NCBI GenBank assembly: GCA_013115145.1
Contig: JAAPAO010000272.1
Location: 1-44,214, forward strand
Origin: Perkinsus chesapeaki ATCC PRA-425
Taxonomy: Eukaryota; Protista; Perkinsozoa
Reading direction: 5' to 3'
DNA length: 44,214 nt
Part shown: piece by piece, positions 1,394 through 8,100 of the stretch
Layout: each line of letters begins with the position of its first letter
Position numbering within the stretch: the first letter of the stretch is position 1
The notes under the pieces: model-generated
The model's input: only the letters and a program-made list of their open reading frames with translations
Told to the model about the DNA's origin: nothing
Databases searched by the model: none
Made by a program: the position numbers and the translations under genes

Positions 1394-3507
1394 TTAAGCA
1401 TCGCCAACCTCCTCCGCCCTCTCTCGCTTAGCGCTCCTTAAGTACGACTTCAACTTCGCCAGTGCACTCAAAAGCTCGGACTTTACACAAGCAATGCATA
1501 GACGGATATAAAGAAAAGCTACAATGCCAATAATAGCCCACGCGTACCTGAAACGATAATCAAACAGCTAGGATTACTCCATTCTATCACCATGGCCATC
1601 CTAGCGGCACCAAGGTCTCTATTATGAGATAAAAGTTAACACCAATAACTAAACATGCCAACATCCACATAATAGACGTCCAAACGTGCCCGATCGCAAA
1701 CCTAAAAGCATAATTGCTTAACACTGTTAATTGTTCTTGGAATGACGAGTAAACCCGCACAAACCTACCTCCCCATAACTTCACGACTCATTGAGAAATG
1801 CAGTACGGGAAGTAAAGCGAAAGGCAATTGGATAGACTGAAGTATATTCAACCAAGCATTCACTCCATTCATAGCTGTTATCTCGCCCTAAAGTACACAG
1901 GATAACTGGAGAAAGTAACGCATAAAAACAGGAGGCCGCACGTGCTCTTGGGAACACTAACTTACCTGAAGTATTGCAAATGCCAACGCAGGCCCGAGGG
2001 CTATAGATCTGGTAATAAGTACACGAACCCACATAGGAATCTGCCACTGCATGAACCCTTCCATAACATATTGACCCGCCAGTGTACCTATAAGACATAC
2101 AAACAATAGCCGCTTCATAATTATCAAGCCTCACCTGTGAGAGTACTAGCCTGACCAGCTGCCAACACTCCCACTGCAAAAATGTACTTAACTCCAGAAG
2201 AGTACCTTACAAGGTAATTCCCACGGACAAAATGCATTAGATGTTTCGCTGCCATAATTCAATAAGTACGAAACACGCCTCTACCTACATAACAGCGGCA
2301 AGAGCACCAGCTGCATTTTCCAGGCCGATATTAGAACAAACACCAGCCATGCCTTCGGGGGTGTGACATTGACAAGCAGGGTCGCTCGGGCTGCATACGG
2401 AGGAATCCCAATCTAAACATAAAGTGAGATAAATGGATGAAGACAAAACTCACCCTCGGGACTTGCTAGGCAGGCAAGAGGACCATTTTGAAGTGTTGCG
2501 CATTGACGGGAGAACATACCATGAGCAAAAGCAGACACCACCGCCAAGTTAATAAGGAATGATACAGATAAAGACGATGTTGAATCGATGAGGAAATATC
2601 TAAAAAAAGAGAATCTAACAGTTTCAAAAGATACCAGTGGGAAAAGAATCCTTGCGAGTGCGCACTTATTAGCTTGTTTGATGTTCCTTTCCTCGCTGCG
2701 ATCAATCTGCCTCGATCGAGTAAGAGCTGAATGTAGGTATAAGTTATGGGGCATAATGACGGCACCAATAAGGCCAACCATTTGCATTACAGCATAACTA
2801 GCAACCAAAGGGATAAAGCCCTTGAAGATATCTTCAGCTGGTGGAGCCGAGATACCCATATCGACAAAGAAGCATATCATCATGGTTAGAATTAATACAA
2901 ATATAAAAGCTTCTAAGACTCTTATACCATGAAACAAATGTAGTGTTAGAAATGTTAAAGTATCAACAGCGGTTATAAGTGTACCAGCCCATAATGGTAT
3001 ATTAAGCAACACTCTGAAGGCTATCGCTGTGCCCAGAACCTCTTGAATGTCTGAGCCTATAATAGCTATCTCGGCCATTATCCACAGAACTGTTGCTGTA
3101 CTTCTAGGATAACGAGCTCTACAATGCTCAGCAAGGTGTACACCAGTAACAGCAGCGATACGGCAAGCAAGCACTTGAAGTAATAAACCAAATATATGTG
3201 CAAGCAACAAAACCCAAAGCATTTGATAACCAGTAAAGGCACCTGCTTGCAGATCAGCTTCAAGGTTACCAGGATCTAGATAGGCTAATGACATTAGCCA
3301 TCCAGGACCAGTATATTTAAAGAATGTACGAAATGAGAACTTAACCCCTGGTGGATCGACCGGGATAACGACTGATTTCTCCTTGCCAAATACTCTTGAA
3401 GATGACGGAACAACTTCCTTTTCTTTAATAGGGCTATTCCCACTCATGGAGGACGCCTGCTCCTCAGTGTCGATAGTGAATTGATCTAAAGGTTTTTCAG
3501 TGGACAT
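1394..3507 (-). CDS. NRAMP: NRAMP/SLC11 divalent metal (Fe/Mn) transporter, multi-exon
   Basis: [24 protein letters not shown] (TM1 DPGN) and [15 protein letters not shown] (TM6 MPH) signatures, with many hydrophobic helices. Downstream exons continue to [16 protein letters not shown]...EEVGDA* (stop at 1394-1396). ATG at 3507 is preceded by a pyrimidine tract and AG. Confidence 0.95.
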
Positions 3508-4366
3508 CACTGAGGGAAACTAAATCTGCGGTGAGTTCGTCTATATGCTAAACCGAGGCAATCGGGATTCCCAGCAACGCATCATTAAATACAGCAAACA
3601 TGAAACTTGAACTATACCGTTCCATAGAGACACAGAATGTCACATTCTGAATGTGCAACGAACAGCAGCAAAGGTTGAGAGATAGAGACGCTCTTTACCA
3701 CCCTACGAAAAAGTGCGCCATTCCTCGGGTTCGTGGAGCGGAGCTGGTACGCCCACACAACGTGCAATTATGAAGTGATACTCTACTGTGAAGTCTATAA
3801 TGTCGCCATAGCATTTCGTCCGCGATTCTCAACAGGTTTGAATAGCTCTACCATGCAGTACTCCTTAACGCGGGGACTCGAACTCGAGTGGGATGCGGTA
3901 CAAGCCTTGTAAAGCGTGCAATGTACACGTGCTGCTGCATGTTAAATAATAAAGAACCCAGGGGAGGAAAGTACAGCTTCATAGAGGAGGAGTTTTGATA
4001 CGCTCTGTATTAAGCCTCTCGATGGCTCTGAGGATCTACAATCATAACTAAACAGCAACTACGAATAAGTTAGAATTCAACCATATAGGCTCCCGAAGAG
4101 AATAGGTGACGTGGCATACGGTAATGGTCCATGCTGGCAAGTGTACCCTAACTTACTTAATATGTTGTAACTTACCTATCAACGCCACATATGTGGACAT
4201 TATCATGGACATCCACATATTATTGTTCTCCATGCTATTGCTCGTGGCATTCATTCGTCCAAGCTCGGCATGGAGCCGTGACGCCAAATCTTGAGTTAGG
4301 AAAGACGCGAGATTTTGCAAGATACGCAAGATTACCCTCACTCTCATCGACACCTTTGTTGTTGTT

Positions 4367-5086
4367 ATGGTTCACCATCGTCTAGGAGCATTACTCCTTG
4401 GCATTACCCTCCTCCTTGTCCTCCTGAACTTCACCTATACCTTCCTTTATCCCTCTACTTTACACTCTGTTGCCCAGCAGCATCAGGCAGCAGCCTCTCG
4501 AACAAACGTCTATATCACTTCTACTGGCATCACCGCCCTCAAAGGATGTGCATTCCTCACCTCAGCGTGGTTGCTCATCACCGCTCTAGTTCGTAGATCG
4601 GCTGCACGGAGACCTTCCACAGAGGACAAGGTCAAGCAAGCAGAACGCACGATTGCAAGATTCGCCGAAAAATATGCCCGAAGGACCGGTACCAAATTTT
4701 GCCGAGATCGGAGGGTAACAGCGCGAGTCATCAGAGGGCTTGCTGAGGTAGGCTTCGGCTTTGGCGGCTCTATCAGCCCTTCTCTTCAGCACAAGGTAGA
4801 ATTAGGCGCTCCGCTGTGCCCTTGTAGAGATTATGAAGATAAAAAAGAGGAAGTAAGGAGGGCCTATTGGAACTGCCCTTGCGTGCCGATGAGGTAAAGC
4901 CAAGGGTCTCCAACTAACCTATTACGAATCTTTTCCAGAACTCAAGGCCATTGTCATTGCATGTTATTCGTTCAACCCGACAGTCCGTGGGCATCTGACG
5001 CCCCACCGAAGATCACGACCGACGATATAGAAGATTTAGGAAACTACTTTGATACCGATGTTTCATGCCTCCTTCACTTGTGTTAA
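4367..5086 (+). CDS. ftrC: Ferredoxin-thioredoxin reductase catalytic (beta) chain with N-terminal hydrophobic leader, 3 exons
   Basis: After removing introns 4748-4789 and 4894-4938 the protein reads RFAEKYARRTGTKFC...VIRGLAEHKVELGAPLCPCRDY...YWNCPCVPMRTQGHCHCMLFV. This is the CPC/CPC/CHC [4Fe-4S]-plus-disulfide signature of FTR-c. Start and last codons are uncertain. Confidence 0.9.
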
Positions 5087-5115
5087 CAGTACACCATCCC
5101 AACAGCAGCAGTTCA

Positions 5116-8100
5116 ATGGACTTAGACTCTCTATCATCACACTCTTCTGACATAACTCTTGTGGTTGATCAAGATGACACCCATAATACTGATCGACCAC
5201 AATGGTCATCTCACCAACAACCACTACAACTAATCAGTCTTGCATCTGGTGATGATGGTCGAGACACTGTACGTTTGTTATCAACCTTCCCACTGAATTC
5301 GTAAATCGACTTAGGTTACAGTATCCTCCGAAGCCCGTGATTATTTCACAAATACTATTGGCAATAGGCCAGTAGCGGTTATGGTGGTCTGTGGGCTCTA
5401 CCGTACCCATCTCATCTTACTAGCCTTACTCTTTGAGTTAGGTACCGGCAAATCCTTCCTATTGAACTTACTGAGCAACACCAACAATCAAGCCTTCACC
5501 GTTGGCTCTACTGTGAATGCATGTTCGAGCCGGGGGGAGTGGTAGTCATTGTATGTGTTGTTATAGGTACTTCGGGCATATGGATGTTAGTCAGCAGCAT
5601 CAACAACGGTAAGGGGGAGGGGGGAGGCCAAGGAGTATCCTTTAACTCGTAAGAGCAGGCGGTCCGATATACGTCCTACTGGACTGTGAGGGGTCCGGCA
5701 ATGTAGAGCATGATAGAGAGCATGACTCCACTCTGTTCGCTCTGGCAACGCTGCTCAGTGGTTACTTCATTTACAACAGTAAAGTGAGTATCCAACAGCA
5801 GCCTCCCTTTTAATAGACGTCTCTTATAGGGTGTAATCGATGAAGGGGCAATCCAGACATTGTCGGTCGTGACGTCCCTGGCACAACACATTCAGCAGGC
5901 CCAAGGAGATGATGACAGCTCTGTTCAACGGAGCTCTATCACCGCCCCTCACTTCCTCTGGGTTGTAAGGCTGTCCCTCACACACAGCCTCAGCAACCCT
6001 CTTTGTTAGTTACGGGATTTCGTATTGTCTTTGGAGGATCAGAACAGCCGTCCAATCAGCGCCCAGGAGTAGGAGTTAACTTTGATGAGGTGGAGGCATT
6101 CCATGGTATCAGATATCTGGAGATCGCTCTGTCCGACAAGAGCAGCGTAGCAGCCTATCGCAGCCAGGAAAGTCGAGATTGTCGAGAAAAGCTCTGCAAG
6201 TATATCTGGCGGAATGGATATCCTCTCATCCCTTCATATAAGAGGTCCAGGGTTCTATCCCCTCCTCAGGCTCTTTACCCACCGAGATTGCATAGCCTTG
6301 GTAACTCCGGTTGTCGATGAGGACCAACTGCAGACTCTAGACACTGTACCATACAACCAGCTTCGACAGGAGTTCCGAGATCAAGTCAGAACCCCACGCT
6401 CTTCTTATCTGCCATGCGGTTTAGGTGGAGCTATTGAAGCGGAAAGTGTATCGCGACTGCGAACCGAAGAGGATCAACGGTGTTCCTGTCACTGGGGTTA
6501 CCTTTGCCAAGTTGCTTGACCAATACGTCAGTTCAATAAACAATAAAGAGGTCGGGGGAGTGAGGTAGAGTACTTCAGGCGTCTCTTGGCAGATACCAAA
6601 AGTTGGCTCTGTCTGGCAAGCGTTACAGGCACAGGAAGGAGAGAGGGTGAGCATGCAATATACACCCGTCACTTTTCTGACACCTCTAGCTGCTGCTGCT
6701 GTATTCAGCTCGTAGATGAATGTTCAGCTGAATACAGGCGTATGATGGATGATAAGGTTAATAGTAAGCTGCCAATATCAGAAGTAGACTTGAGTGCCGA
6801 TCTGAAGGAACTAAGGCATGAAGTATGAATTAGCCATTATCTCTCATCACAGCCTAGAGACTGGCAGATATATGGTAAGTTCAAGAGATGTGCCTTGGGG
6901 GAGAAGAAGGTCGTGATGCAGTATCGTGAACAGTTGAAGGATATCATGGATGGAGTTGACAAACAGGTGAAGGGCGGCGGCGTTGGATTACTGTTGCAAT
7001 ACCTATGTATGGTCGCCACGTATGTACAGTATGTCGACGGATGAAACTGTCAGGGAATCTAACTACGAAACATGCTTTATTTCCTGGGTGAAGTAATATG
7101 AGGCTCAACTTGAACTTCTGTGCTTTGTTCGATCGACTCGAAGTAGTTGTGATTTAGTTGTCATAACTTGTTCTAATCTAGCACTACATTATAGCGGTAT
7201 TACCTCCCCAGTTCGCTGTGAATAGAGGACGAGTAGATTGTTAGGCATACGGTTGGAAAACTAACTCAAGGACTACGGAATCCGCTCATTTACTACACCT
7301 TCGAACCAAGACACTAATACGCTCATAGTAAACATCAGGTGAAAAGCAGCAATGATAAGCTCGCCAATAAGGAGTGTTTGAGGGTATTAAAGGCATTATG
7401 GCGGCCTATAGTAGATCGACTGGATGCGTATGATGATGATAATAATGGTATCGTGGGAACCTTTCAACTGCTCTTGAAGGCTCTCTTCAGCTTATAGTAT
7501 CGATGACGGTATCACTGAGTTTACTAGAGACCTCTCCCACTTGCGGGAAGCCTATCAAAAGGAGGCCAGAGGTTGGTAGATGTTCGCCCTAGAACTACGG
7601 CGGCCAGGCTTCTCTCAGGGCCATCTACTGTGGTAATGGACGTGTATACTAAATGGATGACACCTAAACAAGAGCAAGGGCTATTAAAGCTGACACTAAG
7701 GCAGCAAGAGGCAGCAGCACAGCGGGCTGTAGGGCAATAGGGATTATATGGCTTGATGGGTGTATAGGTGATGGCAGAACGTGAGCGAGCTATTGAGGAG
7801 GAAAAGCGAAGGGCTGAGAAGGAACTAGAGGAACGACGCGCTAGAGAGAAGGAGGAGCGGGAGGTCAGTTGCGGAAATGCGTCGATCGAAGGTTATTCAA
7901 GGTGGGCTCAGAAATACCGTGAAGAGCGAACGGAGAAAATGAGGAATGATGTGAAGCAGTTAGTGGTCGACATTGAAGGTATAGACACACCATCATCAGT
8001 AGAGGGGACGGACGATGACGGCAGCCAAGCCATGGGAGATACTGGAAGGATGCAGGTAGAGTTGATAGAAGTTATGGAGGTAAGGTGCCCATTCAGGCCG

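What the first reader, a model, noticed from the sequence alone, without database searches (positions are those of the whole stretch)
4367..5086. Ferredoxin-thioredoxin reductase with a tripartite-looking plastid leader in a probably non-photosynthetic organism
Seen: intact CPC/CPC/CHC FTR core preceded by about 90 aa: hydrophobic stretch 1 (ALLLGITLLLVLL), an S/T/A/Q-rich acid-poor spacer, a second hydrophobic stretch (GCAFLTSAWLLITALV) and basic RRSAARRPS. Known: FTR normally passes photosystem-I electrons from ferredoxin to thioredoxin in plastids and cyanobacteria; peridinin dinoflagellate plastid proteins often carry signal + transit + second hydrophobic domain; Perkinsus has a cryptic plastid. 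Inference: this is a light-independent NADPH->FNR->Fd->FTR->Trx relay in a relict plastid, imported by a dinoflagellate-style route.
Basis: partly seen in the sequence, partly recalled or inferred. Interest (0 to 1): 0.7.

Follow-up and report, generated by a model that had tools for sequence, protein, structure and literature searches.

The report
Perkinsus plastid-type ferredoxin-thioredoxin reductase gene
A three-exon gene of a Perkinsus-like oyster/clam parasite encodes a normal chloroplast-type ferredoxin-thioredoxin reductase behind a conserved dinoflagellate-style import leader. This suggests the parasite's colourless relict plastid still runs a thiol-redox switch, though the location and the partner proteins remain untested.

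Summary
Window 4367-5086 (+) is a three-exon gene with introns at 4748-4789 and 4894-4938. Its product is a canonical catalytic subunit of ferredoxin-thioredoxin reductase (FTRc), with the CPC/CPC/CHC motifs intact, behind an ~87-aa leader.

**Organism.** The locus is syntenic (Nramp / FTR / GBP / GNAT) with P. olseni and P. marinus-like contigs, so the organism is a third Perkinsus-like species.

**Leader.** All three species keep the same intron positions and the same leader plan. That plan is a hydrophobic helix, an invariant FLYP, a variable acid-free spacer, an invariant KGC, a second hydrophobic helix and an Arg cluster. Symbiodiniaceae FTRc and its unlabelled relatives carry the same class I layout (FLSP/FVA, second helix, Arg-rich). 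Other algal FTRc have one hydrophobic segment or none.

**Domain.** It is 54-73% identical to cyanobacterial and plastid FTRc, against 22-26% for archaeal/bacterial FDR. Its exact position in the tree is unresolved.

**Not shown.** Transcript 5' end, localisation, FTRv, Trx and targets are untested.

**Prior knowledge.** No paper in the searched library links FTR with Perkinsus. The P. marinus reference annotation hides the gene inside a chimeric "GBP" model.

First-stage notes of this scan (unchecked) report similar leaders on FNR, SPP, SufB and CMP kinase elsewhere in this genome.

Verdict: a new member of a known kind, of moderate interest.

The parts
4367..4747 (+). Exon 1: leader (residues 1-87) plus the first helix region of the FTRc fold (residues 88-127)
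   Evidence: Translation. PDB phmmer match of residues 88-127 to FTRc residues 6-44. Orthologous exons in L001 and L002.
4382..4426 (+). Hydrophobic stretch 1 (LGALLLGITLLLVLL, residues 6-20): signal-peptide-like h-region
   Evidence: KD peak of 2.9. The P. olseni ortholog is modelled as helix 8-31. Present in all orthologs.
4442..4453 (+). FLYP motif (residues 26-29): FVAP-like phenylalanine motif after the first hydrophobic stretch
   Evidence: Invariant in the window, the P. marinus-like ortholog and both P. olseni alleles. Collinear with FLSP/FLP/FVA in Symbiodiniaceae-clade FTRc.
4454..4540 (+). Transit-peptide-like spacer (residues 30-58): S/T/A/Q-rich, no acidic residue, poorly conserved
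   Evidence: Composition. Variable columns in A1. pLDDT ~50 in the ortholog model.
4541..4591 (+). Invariant KGC followed by hydrophobic stretch 2 (GCAFLTSAWLLITALV, residues 59-75): candidate stop-transfer membrane anchor
   Evidence: KD peak of 2.1. K59, G60, C61, S66, L69, A73 and L74 are invariant. The ortholog is modelled as helix 60-83.
4592..4612 (+). Arg-rich stretch RRSAARR (residues 76-82) directly after stretch 2
   Evidence: R76 and R77 are invariant. The same R-rich, acid-free tail occurs in the class I FTRc of the Symbiodiniaceae clade.
4748..4789 (+). Intron 1 (42 nt, GT..AG, phase 0, in frame, no stop)
   Evidence: Its removal gives an uninterrupted match to FTRc. There is an intron at the same position in L001 and L002, differing in length and sequence.
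4790..4893 (+). Exon 2: both CPC motifs (4817-4825, 4874-4882)
   Evidence: Pfam E 4.4e-13. PDB E 2e-15.
4894..4938 (+). Intron 2 (45 nt, GT..AG, phase 2, inside the Arg codon of PMR)
   Evidence: Sequence. Same position in L001 and L002.
4939..5086 (+). Exon 3: CHC motif (4952-4960), the C-terminal part of the fold, a species-specific tail, and stop TAA 5084-5086
   Evidence: Translation. Pfam match to profile positions 77-96. Alignment A2.

Best explanation
The gene encodes the catalytic ([4Fe-4S] plus redox-active disulfide) subunit of ferredoxin-thioredoxin reductase of a Perkinsus-like alveolate. It is made as a precursor with a dinoflagellate class I-type plastid presequence.

Inferred route:
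1. The first hydrophobic stretch takes the nascent chain into the ER.
2. The FLYP-headed, acid-free spacer acts as the transit peptide.
3. The second hydrophobic stretch, with its Arg cluster on the cytosolic side, acts as a stop-transfer anchor while vesicles carry the precursor to the relict plastid.
4. The leader is removed in the plastid.

Inferred function: with no photosystem I, plastid ferredoxin is reduced by NADPH through FNR. FTR then passes these electrons to a plastid thioredoxin, which reduces disulfides of target proteins.

Shown: gene structure, family, intact catalytic residues, strong purifying selection on the domain, and conservation and dinoflagellate likeness of the leader.

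Inferred: the import route, the location, the partners and the direction of electron flow.
For: Family and fold:
- All three exons match PF02943.
- Exons 1 and 2 match solved FTRc end to end across the junction.
- All six Cys, the His of CHC and the Arg after the first CPC are present.
- The P. olseni ortholog domain is 58-73% identical to cyanobacterial/plastid FTRc.
- Its model (pLDDT >90 over the domain) superposes on FTR catalytic chains at TM 0.90-0.94 and rmsd 0.8-1.1 A. FDR of Methanosarcina and Desulfotalea reach only TM ~0.35-0.38 and 22-26% identity.

Orthology and selection:
- The gene order matches the P. olseni contig.
- Both introns sit at the same positions in three species.
- Between the P. 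marinus-like and P. olseni genes, dN/dS is 0.04 for the domain part of exon 1 and 0.47 for the leader. The frame stays open in all three although synonymous sites are saturated against the window.

Leader:
- FLYP, KGC, the second helix and RR are invariant amid a variable spacer.
- Two 24-residue helices are modelled in the ortholog.
- 65 FTRc homologs have >=55-aa extensions. Two hydrophobic peaks followed by an Arg-rich, acid-poor tail occur only in Perkinsus and in P0131, P0144, P0149, P0151, P0175/P0279 and P0199.
- The P0131 cluster carries Symbiodinium FTRC names. P0131, P0144, P0149, P0151 and P0175 form one starred clade.
- These features are the published definition of class I presequences (PMC4217693, PMC3055265).

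Start codon: the only AUG that can give the complete fold is 4367.

Context from the literature:
- Perkinsus expresses plant-type ferredoxin and FNR with targeting sequences, and a plastid was seen by immunofluorescence (PMC2868825, PMC5756292, PMC4010437).
- An FTR/Trx pair in a colourless plastid has a precedent in Euglena longa (PMC7580956).
Against: - No RNA evidence covers the gene, so neither the 5' end nor the splicing of the window's own transcript was seen.
- No signal-peptide or TM predictor was available. In two orthologs Arg stands at -1 of FLYP, which is a poor signal-peptidase site.
- A predicted plastid leader is not proof in Perkinsus. PmSOD2 was predicted plastidial but localised to the cell periphery and to single-membrane compartments (PMC2868825).
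- FTRv, a plastid Trx and Trx targets were not searched.
- Plastid-type HCF101, which loads the cluster on FTR in Arabidopsis, is reported absent from P. marinus (PMC7980591).
- The tree does not place Perkinsus with dinoflagellates. In one tree it joins an unlabelled leaderless sequence (P0130) near cyanobacteria, flagged as a long-branch join.
- Perkinsus has CPCRDY and PMRT(K/Q)GHCHC where nearly all others have CPCRHY and PMRERKECHC. The effect of these changes is unknown.
- Leader similarity to Symbiodiniaceae is one of plan and motifs. BLASTP finds significant similarity only from the Arg cluster onwards.
Confidence: 0.7

Rival explanations
1. The two hydrophobic stretches are permanent membrane anchors, either a helical hairpin or a cleaved signal plus a type I anchor. 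The FTR domain would then sit on a membrane of the endomembrane system or of the plastid envelope rather than free in the stroma, and might serve a different acceptor there.
For: Two helices of TM length are modelled. KGC and the second helix are more conserved than expected for a mere spacer. PmSOD2 shows that plastid-like leaders in Perkinsus can end in single-membrane compartments.
Against: The same layout is the standard, cleaved class I presequence of soluble plastid proteins in dinoflagellates. It precedes FTRc in Symbiodiniaceae, where FTR is a plastid enzyme. FTR needs plant-type ferredoxin, which Perkinsus literature places in the plastid.
Confidence: 0.15
2. The gene is not a vertical heirloom of the dinoflagellate/perkinsid plastid. 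It was acquired separately from a cyanobacterium-like or other donor and later fitted with a leader.
For: In the free trees Perkinsus does not join the Symbiodiniaceae clade. Once it joins leaderless P0130 next to Pleurocapsales (97/85).
Against: That join is flagged as a long-branch meeting and dissolves to 52/49 support on domain-only columns. AU tests do not reject Perkinsus+dinoflagellates (p 0.34), Perkinsus+Chromera (p 0.40) or Perkinsus+Chromera+dinoflagellates (p 0.14). They also do not reject Perkinsus+cyanobacteria (p 0.17). The collinear leader motifs with Symbiodiniaceae FTRc favour common descent of the whole precursor.
Confidence: 0.12
3. The gene is a decaying relic of photosynthetic ancestry with no present function.
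For: No expression data were obtained. Two near-universal motifs are altered.
Against: The frame is intact, the splice sites are conserved and all catalytic residues are present in three species whose synonymous sites are saturated. Domain dN/dS is 0.04.
Confidence: 0.03

Closest known systems
Ferredoxin-thioredoxin reductase catalytic chain of cyanobacteria and chloroplasts (Synechocystis 1DJ7/2PVG; Arabidopsis 7BZK)
   Same: Same fold, with TM 0.90-0.94 and 54-59% identity for the P. olseni ortholog. Same CPC-X16-CPC-X8-CHC pattern. Exon-by-exon matches of E 2e-15 and 2.6e-06.
   Different: Sits in a non-photosynthetic parasite. Carries an ~87-aa two-helix leader. Has CPCRDY and PMRT(K/Q)GHCHC variants. 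A variable subunit has not been identified.
Symbiodiniaceae FTRc precursor (P0131; cluster members named FTRC of Symbiodinium spp.) and unlabelled clade mates P0144, P0149, P0151, P0175
   Same: Same order of parts: hydrophobic N-terminus, F(L/V)xP-type motif, acid-free spacer, second hydrophobic helix, Arg-rich tail, FTRc domain.
   Different: These belong to photosynthetic hosts. Their leaders are 100-150 aa, often with an acidic stretch before the domain. Leader sequence similarity to Perkinsus is not significant by BLASTP. The domains do not cluster with Perkinsus in the free tree.
Fd/Trx system of the colourless plastid of Euglena longa (PMC7580956) and, from my own knowledge, of cereal amyloplasts (Balmer et al. 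2006)
   Same: FTR kept in a plastid without photosynthesis. Electrons are presumed to come from NADPH via FNR and ferredoxin.
   Different: In E. longa the targets are Calvin-Benson enzymes with known regulatory cysteines. No such targets are known for the Perkinsus plastid, whose documented roles are the MEP pathway, Fe-S assembly and the ferredoxin system.
Archaeal/bacterial ferredoxin-dependent disulfide reductases (Methanosarcina FDR 4TPU; Desulfotalea Grx-FDR 7PWE)
   Same: Distantly related FTRc-like core.
   Different: Only 22-26% identity and TM 0.35-0.38 to the Perkinsus model. The window's protein is not of this type.

Membership tests
FTR catalytic subunit (Pfam PF02943, EC 1.8.7.2) | CPC-X16-CPC-X8-CHC: four cluster ligands, the redox-active Cys pair and the His of CHC | tested here: met
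   CPC 4817-4825, CPC 4874-4882, CHC 4952-4960. These are invariant columns of A4.
FTR catalytic subunit (Pfam PF02943, EC 1.8.7.2) | Profile match above the curated cut-off | tested here: met
Exon 2 scores 49.6 bits against a cut-off of 22. Exon 1 scores 22.0 and exon 3 scores 19.2, each scanned alone.
FTR catalytic subunit (Pfam PF02943, EC 1.8.7.2) | FTRc fold | tested here: met
   Tested on the P. olseni ortholog only: pLDDT >90 over the domain, and Foldseek TM 0.90-0.94 to 7BZK/2PVG/1DJ7 chain A.
FTR catalytic subunit (Pfam PF02943, EC 1.8.7.2) | Heterodimer with a variable subunit (PF02941) | not tested
   No tool-derived FTRv query was available, and there was no access to the rest of the genome.
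FTR catalytic subunit (Pfam PF02943, EC 1.8.7.2) | Ferredoxin-dependent reduction of thioredoxin | not testable with these tools
   Needs a biochemical assay.
Dinoflagellate class I plastid presequence (as defined in PMC4217693 and PMC3055265, after Patron et al. 2005) | N-terminal hydrophobic signal peptide | tested here: inconclusive
   A hydrophobic peak covers residues 4-29, preceded by basic MVHHR, and the ortholog is modelled as a helix there. No signal-peptide predictor was available and the cleavage site is unclear.
Dinoflagellate class I plastid presequence (as defined in PMC4217693 and PMC3055265, after Patron et al. 2005) | FVAP-type phenylalanine motif after the signal peptide | tested here: met
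   FLYP is invariant in three species. The counterparts are FLSP, FLP, FVA and FVG in the Symbiodiniaceae clade.
Dinoflagellate class I plastid presequence (as defined in PMC4217693 and PMC3055265, after Patron et al. 2005) | Hydroxylated/Ala-rich, acid-poor transit region | tested here: met
   There are no D/E in residues 1-85. Residues 1-95 hold 19 S+T and 12 A.
Dinoflagellate class I plastid presequence (as defined in PMC4217693 and PMC3055265, after Patron et al. 2005) | Second hydrophobic (stop-transfer) domain before the mature protein, followed at once by an Arg-rich hydrophilic stretch | tested here: met
   Residues 60-75 followed by RRSAARR. Conserved. Helix 60-83 in the ortholog model.
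Dinoflagellate class I plastid presequence (as defined in PMC4217693 and PMC3055265, after Patron et al. 2005) | Demonstrated ER/Golgi-to-plastid routing and removal of the leader | not testable with these tools
   Needs localisation and processing experiments.
Complete Fd/Trx system of a non-photosynthetic plastid | Plastid ferredoxin and FNR in the same organism | not tested
   Literature for P. marinus only (PMC2868825, PMC5756292). Scan note s1-218270 on FNR is unchecked.
Complete Fd/Trx system of a non-photosynthetic plastid | Plastid-targeted thioredoxin and Trx-regulated targets | not tested
   Word searches of the scan's notes for this genome gave no plastid Trx. A blank there means little.

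The most novel reading that the evidence does not exclude
The whole precursor, leader included, descends from the common photosynthetic ancestor of perkinsids and dinoflagellates. On this reading the class I (stop-transfer, vesicle-routed) import route predates their split and still serves the genome-less Perkinsus plastid. That plastid would also keep a ferredoxin-driven thiol-redox control layer, not among the functions so far described for Perkinsus (MEP pathway, Fe-S assembly, ferredoxin system), possibly acting on MEP-pathway enzymes, peroxiredoxins or protein import.
Probability: 0.4. Interest if true: 0.6.

Novelty: new member of a known kind. Interest (0 to 1): 0.42.

Why it matters
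The Perkinsus relict plastid is described as housing the MEP pathway, Fe-S assembly and a ferredoxin/FNR couple. A conserved, strongly constrained FTRc adds a fourth ferredoxin client. It implies that thioredoxin-regulated proteins exist in this organelle.

The gene is easy to miss. The P. marinus reference model fuses part of it to the neighbouring GBP gene, and ORF callers read through intron 1.

The leader also gives a clean comparative case. The same enzyme carries the same class I layout in Symbiodiniaceae. This bears on when the dinoflagellate import route arose, and so on how many membranes surround the Perkinsus plastid.

For a shellfish pathogen, a plastid-specific Fe-S redox enzyme is also a possible drug-target lead. 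All of this depends on localisation and partner data that are still missing.

Tried and rejected
1. **RNA evidence.** The only runs holding any of window 3900-5500 were four spliced-leader RT-PCR 454 metatranscriptomes. They cover 3900-4060 only, which is the 5' end of the neighbouring minus-strand gene, and nothing over the FTR gene.

2. **Phylogeny.**
   - The 81-row tree (140 columns) and the 57-row domain-only tree (103 columns) both leave Perkinsus on a long, unplaced branch.
   - AU tests reject none of the four groupings tried.
   - Rows left out of the second tree: near-duplicates and surplus unlabelled representatives (24 ids listed).
The P. olseni orthologs stood in for it.

3. **P0130.** This was the apparent sister in tree 1. 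Its Logan contig (L003) did not translate to the query at the given coordinates and the upstream ORF had a stop. I did not pursue it.

4. **Literature.** No paper in the held library combines Perkinsus with ferredoxin-thioredoxin reductase other than in passing. Fernandez Robledo et al. 2011 (PMC6810647) is not held. The EST paper's supplements have no FeThRed entry.

5. **Scan notes.** Searches for thioredoxin and ferredoxin gave no plastid partner.

6. **Rejected readings.**
   - Mitochondrial presequence: the N-terminus is a plain hydrophobic helix rather than an amphipathic basic one.
   - Archaeal/bacterial FDR-type enzyme: excluded.
   - Spliced-leader gene in the window: none found.

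7. **Not used.** The third homologous-protein search was left unused. A leader-only query could not have reached significance in a database of that size.

Full report
**Observation**

Window 4367-5086 on the + strand holds a three-exon gene:
- Exon 1 is 4367-4747 (127 codons).
- Intron 1 is 4748-4789 (42 nt, GT..AG, in frame and without a stop).
- Exon 2 is 4790-4893.
- Intron 2 is 4894-4938 (45 nt, GT..AG, inside an Arg codon).
- Exon 3 is 4939-5086.

The junctions are exact. Residues 88-127 of exon 1 match residues 6-44 of Arabidopsis FTRc, and exon 2 matches residues 45-78 (46-79 of Synechocystis 1DJ7). Each exon hits Pfam PF02943, and exon 2 alone scores 49.6 bits. The two CPC motifs and the CHC motif are intact.

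The 176-aa ORF that a mechanical ORF list gives reads through intron 1.

ATG 4367 follows an in-frame stop 25 codons upstream and is the only Met codon of exon 1. An internal AUG therefore cannot yield a leaderless protein with the full fold.

**Organism and orthologs**

A search with exon 1 found two relatives. One is a P. olseni protein, and the other is a 141-aa Logan product that reads into intron 1.

The P. olseni contig has the same gene order as the window: Nramp (-), FTR (+), GBP (+), then an acetyltransferase.

The Logan contig (L001) carries a gene whose product matches the N-terminus of P. marinus ATCC 50983 EER06166.1. That reference model, named "interferon-induced guanylate-binding protein", starts at an internal Met of FTR exon 1, runs through exon 2 and then jumps into the GBP gene. 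The P. marinus reference annotation therefore hides the FTR gene.

All three species have introns at the same two positions, with different lengths and sequences.

The window is neither of the two named species, because its synonymous sites are saturated against both. It is a third Perkinsus-like lineage. A guess at the species would be inference only.

**The domain**

- The P. olseni ortholog's domain is 58-73% identical to cyanobacterial and plastid FTRc.
- Its AlphaFold model has pLDDT above 90 over the domain.
- The model superposes on FTR catalytic chains at TM 0.90-0.94, rmsd 0.8-1.1 A and 54-59% identity.
- The archaeal and bacterial ferredoxin-dependent disulfide reductases reach only 22-26% identity.
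- dN/dS for the domain part of exon 1 between the P. marinus-like and P. olseni genes is 0.04.

Perkinsus-specific changes are CPCRDY for CPCRHY and PMRT(K/Q)GHCHC for PMRERKECHC. Their effect is unknown.

**The leader**

Kyte-Doolittle profiles show two hydrophobic peaks in the window and in every ortholog. The P. olseni model shows two 24-residue helices (8-31 and 60-83) separated by a low-confidence spacer.

Across three species the leader is only 33-44% identical (dN/dS 0.47), but several features are invariant:
- FLYP (residues 26-29 in the window)
- KGC (59-61)
- S66, L69, A73, L74
- R76, R77

The window's leader has no acidic residue before position 86.

**Comparison with dinoflagellates**

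The exhaustive representative search returned FTRc precursors with long extensions. P0131 belongs to a cluster whose other members are named FTRC of Symbiodinium species. Its leader reads: hydrophobic N-terminus, FLSP, Ser/Thr/Gly-rich spacer, HKGY, second hydrophobic stretch, Arg-rich tail. This is collinear with Perkinsus.

I examined 65 homologs with at least 55 residues before the domain. Two hydrophobic peaks followed by a basic, acid-poor tail occur only in Perkinsus and in P0131, P0144, P0149, P0151, P0175/P0279 and P0199. The first five form one starred clade with P0131. Only P0131 is taxonomically labelled, so "dinoflagellate" for the others is inference. All other homologs have one hydrophobic segment (bipartite type) or none (primary-plastid type).

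The published definition of the class I presequence is a signal peptide, an FVA/SP motif, a transit region, and a stop-transfer anchor followed by an Arg-rich hydrophilic stretch (PMC4217693, PMC3055265). The window meets each sequence feature.

The likeness is one of plan and motifs. BLASTP similarity to P0131 becomes significant only from the Arg cluster onwards.

**Phylogeny**

Both trees leave Perkinsus on a long branch inside canonical FTRc. One tree joins it to unlabelled, leaderless P0130 near Pleurocapsales, and this is flagged as a long-branch join. The domain-only tree gives that join 52/49 support.

AU tests reject none of these groupings:

| Grouping | p |
|---|---|
| Perkinsus + Symbiodiniaceae clade | 0.34 |
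| Perkinsus + Chromera | 0.40 |
| Perkinsus + Chromera + Symbiodiniaceae clade | 0.14 |
| Perkinsus + labelled cyanobacteria | 0.17 |

About 100 columns cannot settle the origin.

**Mechanism**

The best reading is a plastid-targeted FTRc. The first helix enters the ER. The FLYP-headed spacer is the transit peptide. The second helix, with Arg on the cytosolic side, holds the precursor in the vesicle membrane until delivery. The mature enzyme then takes electrons from NADPH-FNR-reduced ferredoxin and reduces a thioredoxin.

Supporting literature:
- Perkinsus expresses plant-type ferredoxin and FNR (PMC2868825).
- Their genes carry bipartite targeting sequences (PMC5756292, citing Stelter et al. 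2007).
- A plastid was identified by immunofluorescence (PMC4010437, citing Matsuzaki et al. 2008).
- Euglena longa keeps FTR and Trx in a colourless plastid (PMC7580956).

Cautions:
- PmSOD2 was predicted plastidial but localised elsewhere.
- Plastid HCF101, the cluster donor for FTR in Arabidopsis, is reported absent from P. marinus.
- No RNA evidence, FTRv, Trx or targets were obtained.

**Novelty**

No paper in the held library connects FTR with Perkinsus. UniRef names the P. olseni proteins automatically as ferredoxin:thioredoxin reductase, so the family assignment exists in databases.

FTR in a non-photosynthetic plastid and class I presequences are both known kinds. This is a new member of each, in a lineage where it had been overlooked.

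First-stage notes of this scan (unchecked) describe similar leaders on FNR, SPP, SufB and CMP kinase on other pieces of the same genome. I could not read those sequences.

**Limits**

The whole-protein fold and the trees used the P. olseni orthologs instead. No signal-peptide or TM predictor was available.

Noticed in passing
window 3900-4060 (- strand): This stretch is 100% identical to contigs of four spliced-leader RT-PCR 454 marine metatranscriptome runs. At 4060 the contigs continue with the reverse complement of the dinoflagellate-type spliced leader (CCGTAGCCATTTTGGCTCA). The minus-strand Nramp gene (large ORF 2413-3510) therefore appears to be SL trans-spliced at about 4059/4060, and this organism or a near-identical one is present in those samples. 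There is no SL gene in the window.
   Followed up: partly
window 5084-5118: Only 29 nt separate the FTR stop codon (5084-5086) from the ATG (5116) of the next gene, a GBP/atlastin-like GTPase on the same strand. The spacing is 68 nt in L001 and about 100 nt in L002. The 3' end of the FTR mRNA must abut or overlap the trans-splice acceptor of the GBP, which suggests co-transcription.
   Followed up: no
L001:243-1200 and protein P0219: P. marinus ATCC 50983 EER06166.1 ('interferon-induced guanylate-binding protein, putative') is a chimeric gene model. It consists of an internal Met of FTR exon 1 plus exon 2, followed by GBP exons. It lacks the leader and the CHC motif.
   Followed up: partly
window 4748-4789: Intron 1 is 42 nt, in frame and free of stops. 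Intron retention or naive ORF calling would therefore insert 14 residues (VGFGFGGSISPSLQ) into the FTRc fold.
   Followed up: no
window 5041-5086: The C-terminal tail of the window's protein (GNYFDTDVSCLLHLC) is about 10 residues longer than, and unrelated to, the APDEP end shared by the P. marinus-like and P. olseni orthologs.
   Followed up: no
proteins P0143/P0280 (JGI metagenome) and P0173 (Chromera velia): Like Perkinsus, these FTRc lack the His of CPCRHY (they have CPCRSY). P0143 also has PMRT..DCHC and GTKFC as in Perkinsus, but a different long leader with a single hydrophobic segment and an acidic stretch. Its organism is unknown.
   Followed up: no
L003 (Logan SRR21700166 contig, 1376 nt): Leaderless FTRc P0130 shares TKFC, VELGAPLCPC and FLQPD with Perkinsus and joined it in one tree. 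The contig's gene did not translate to the query at the listed coordinates, and GC rises from 32% to 51% along the contig.
   Followed up: partly
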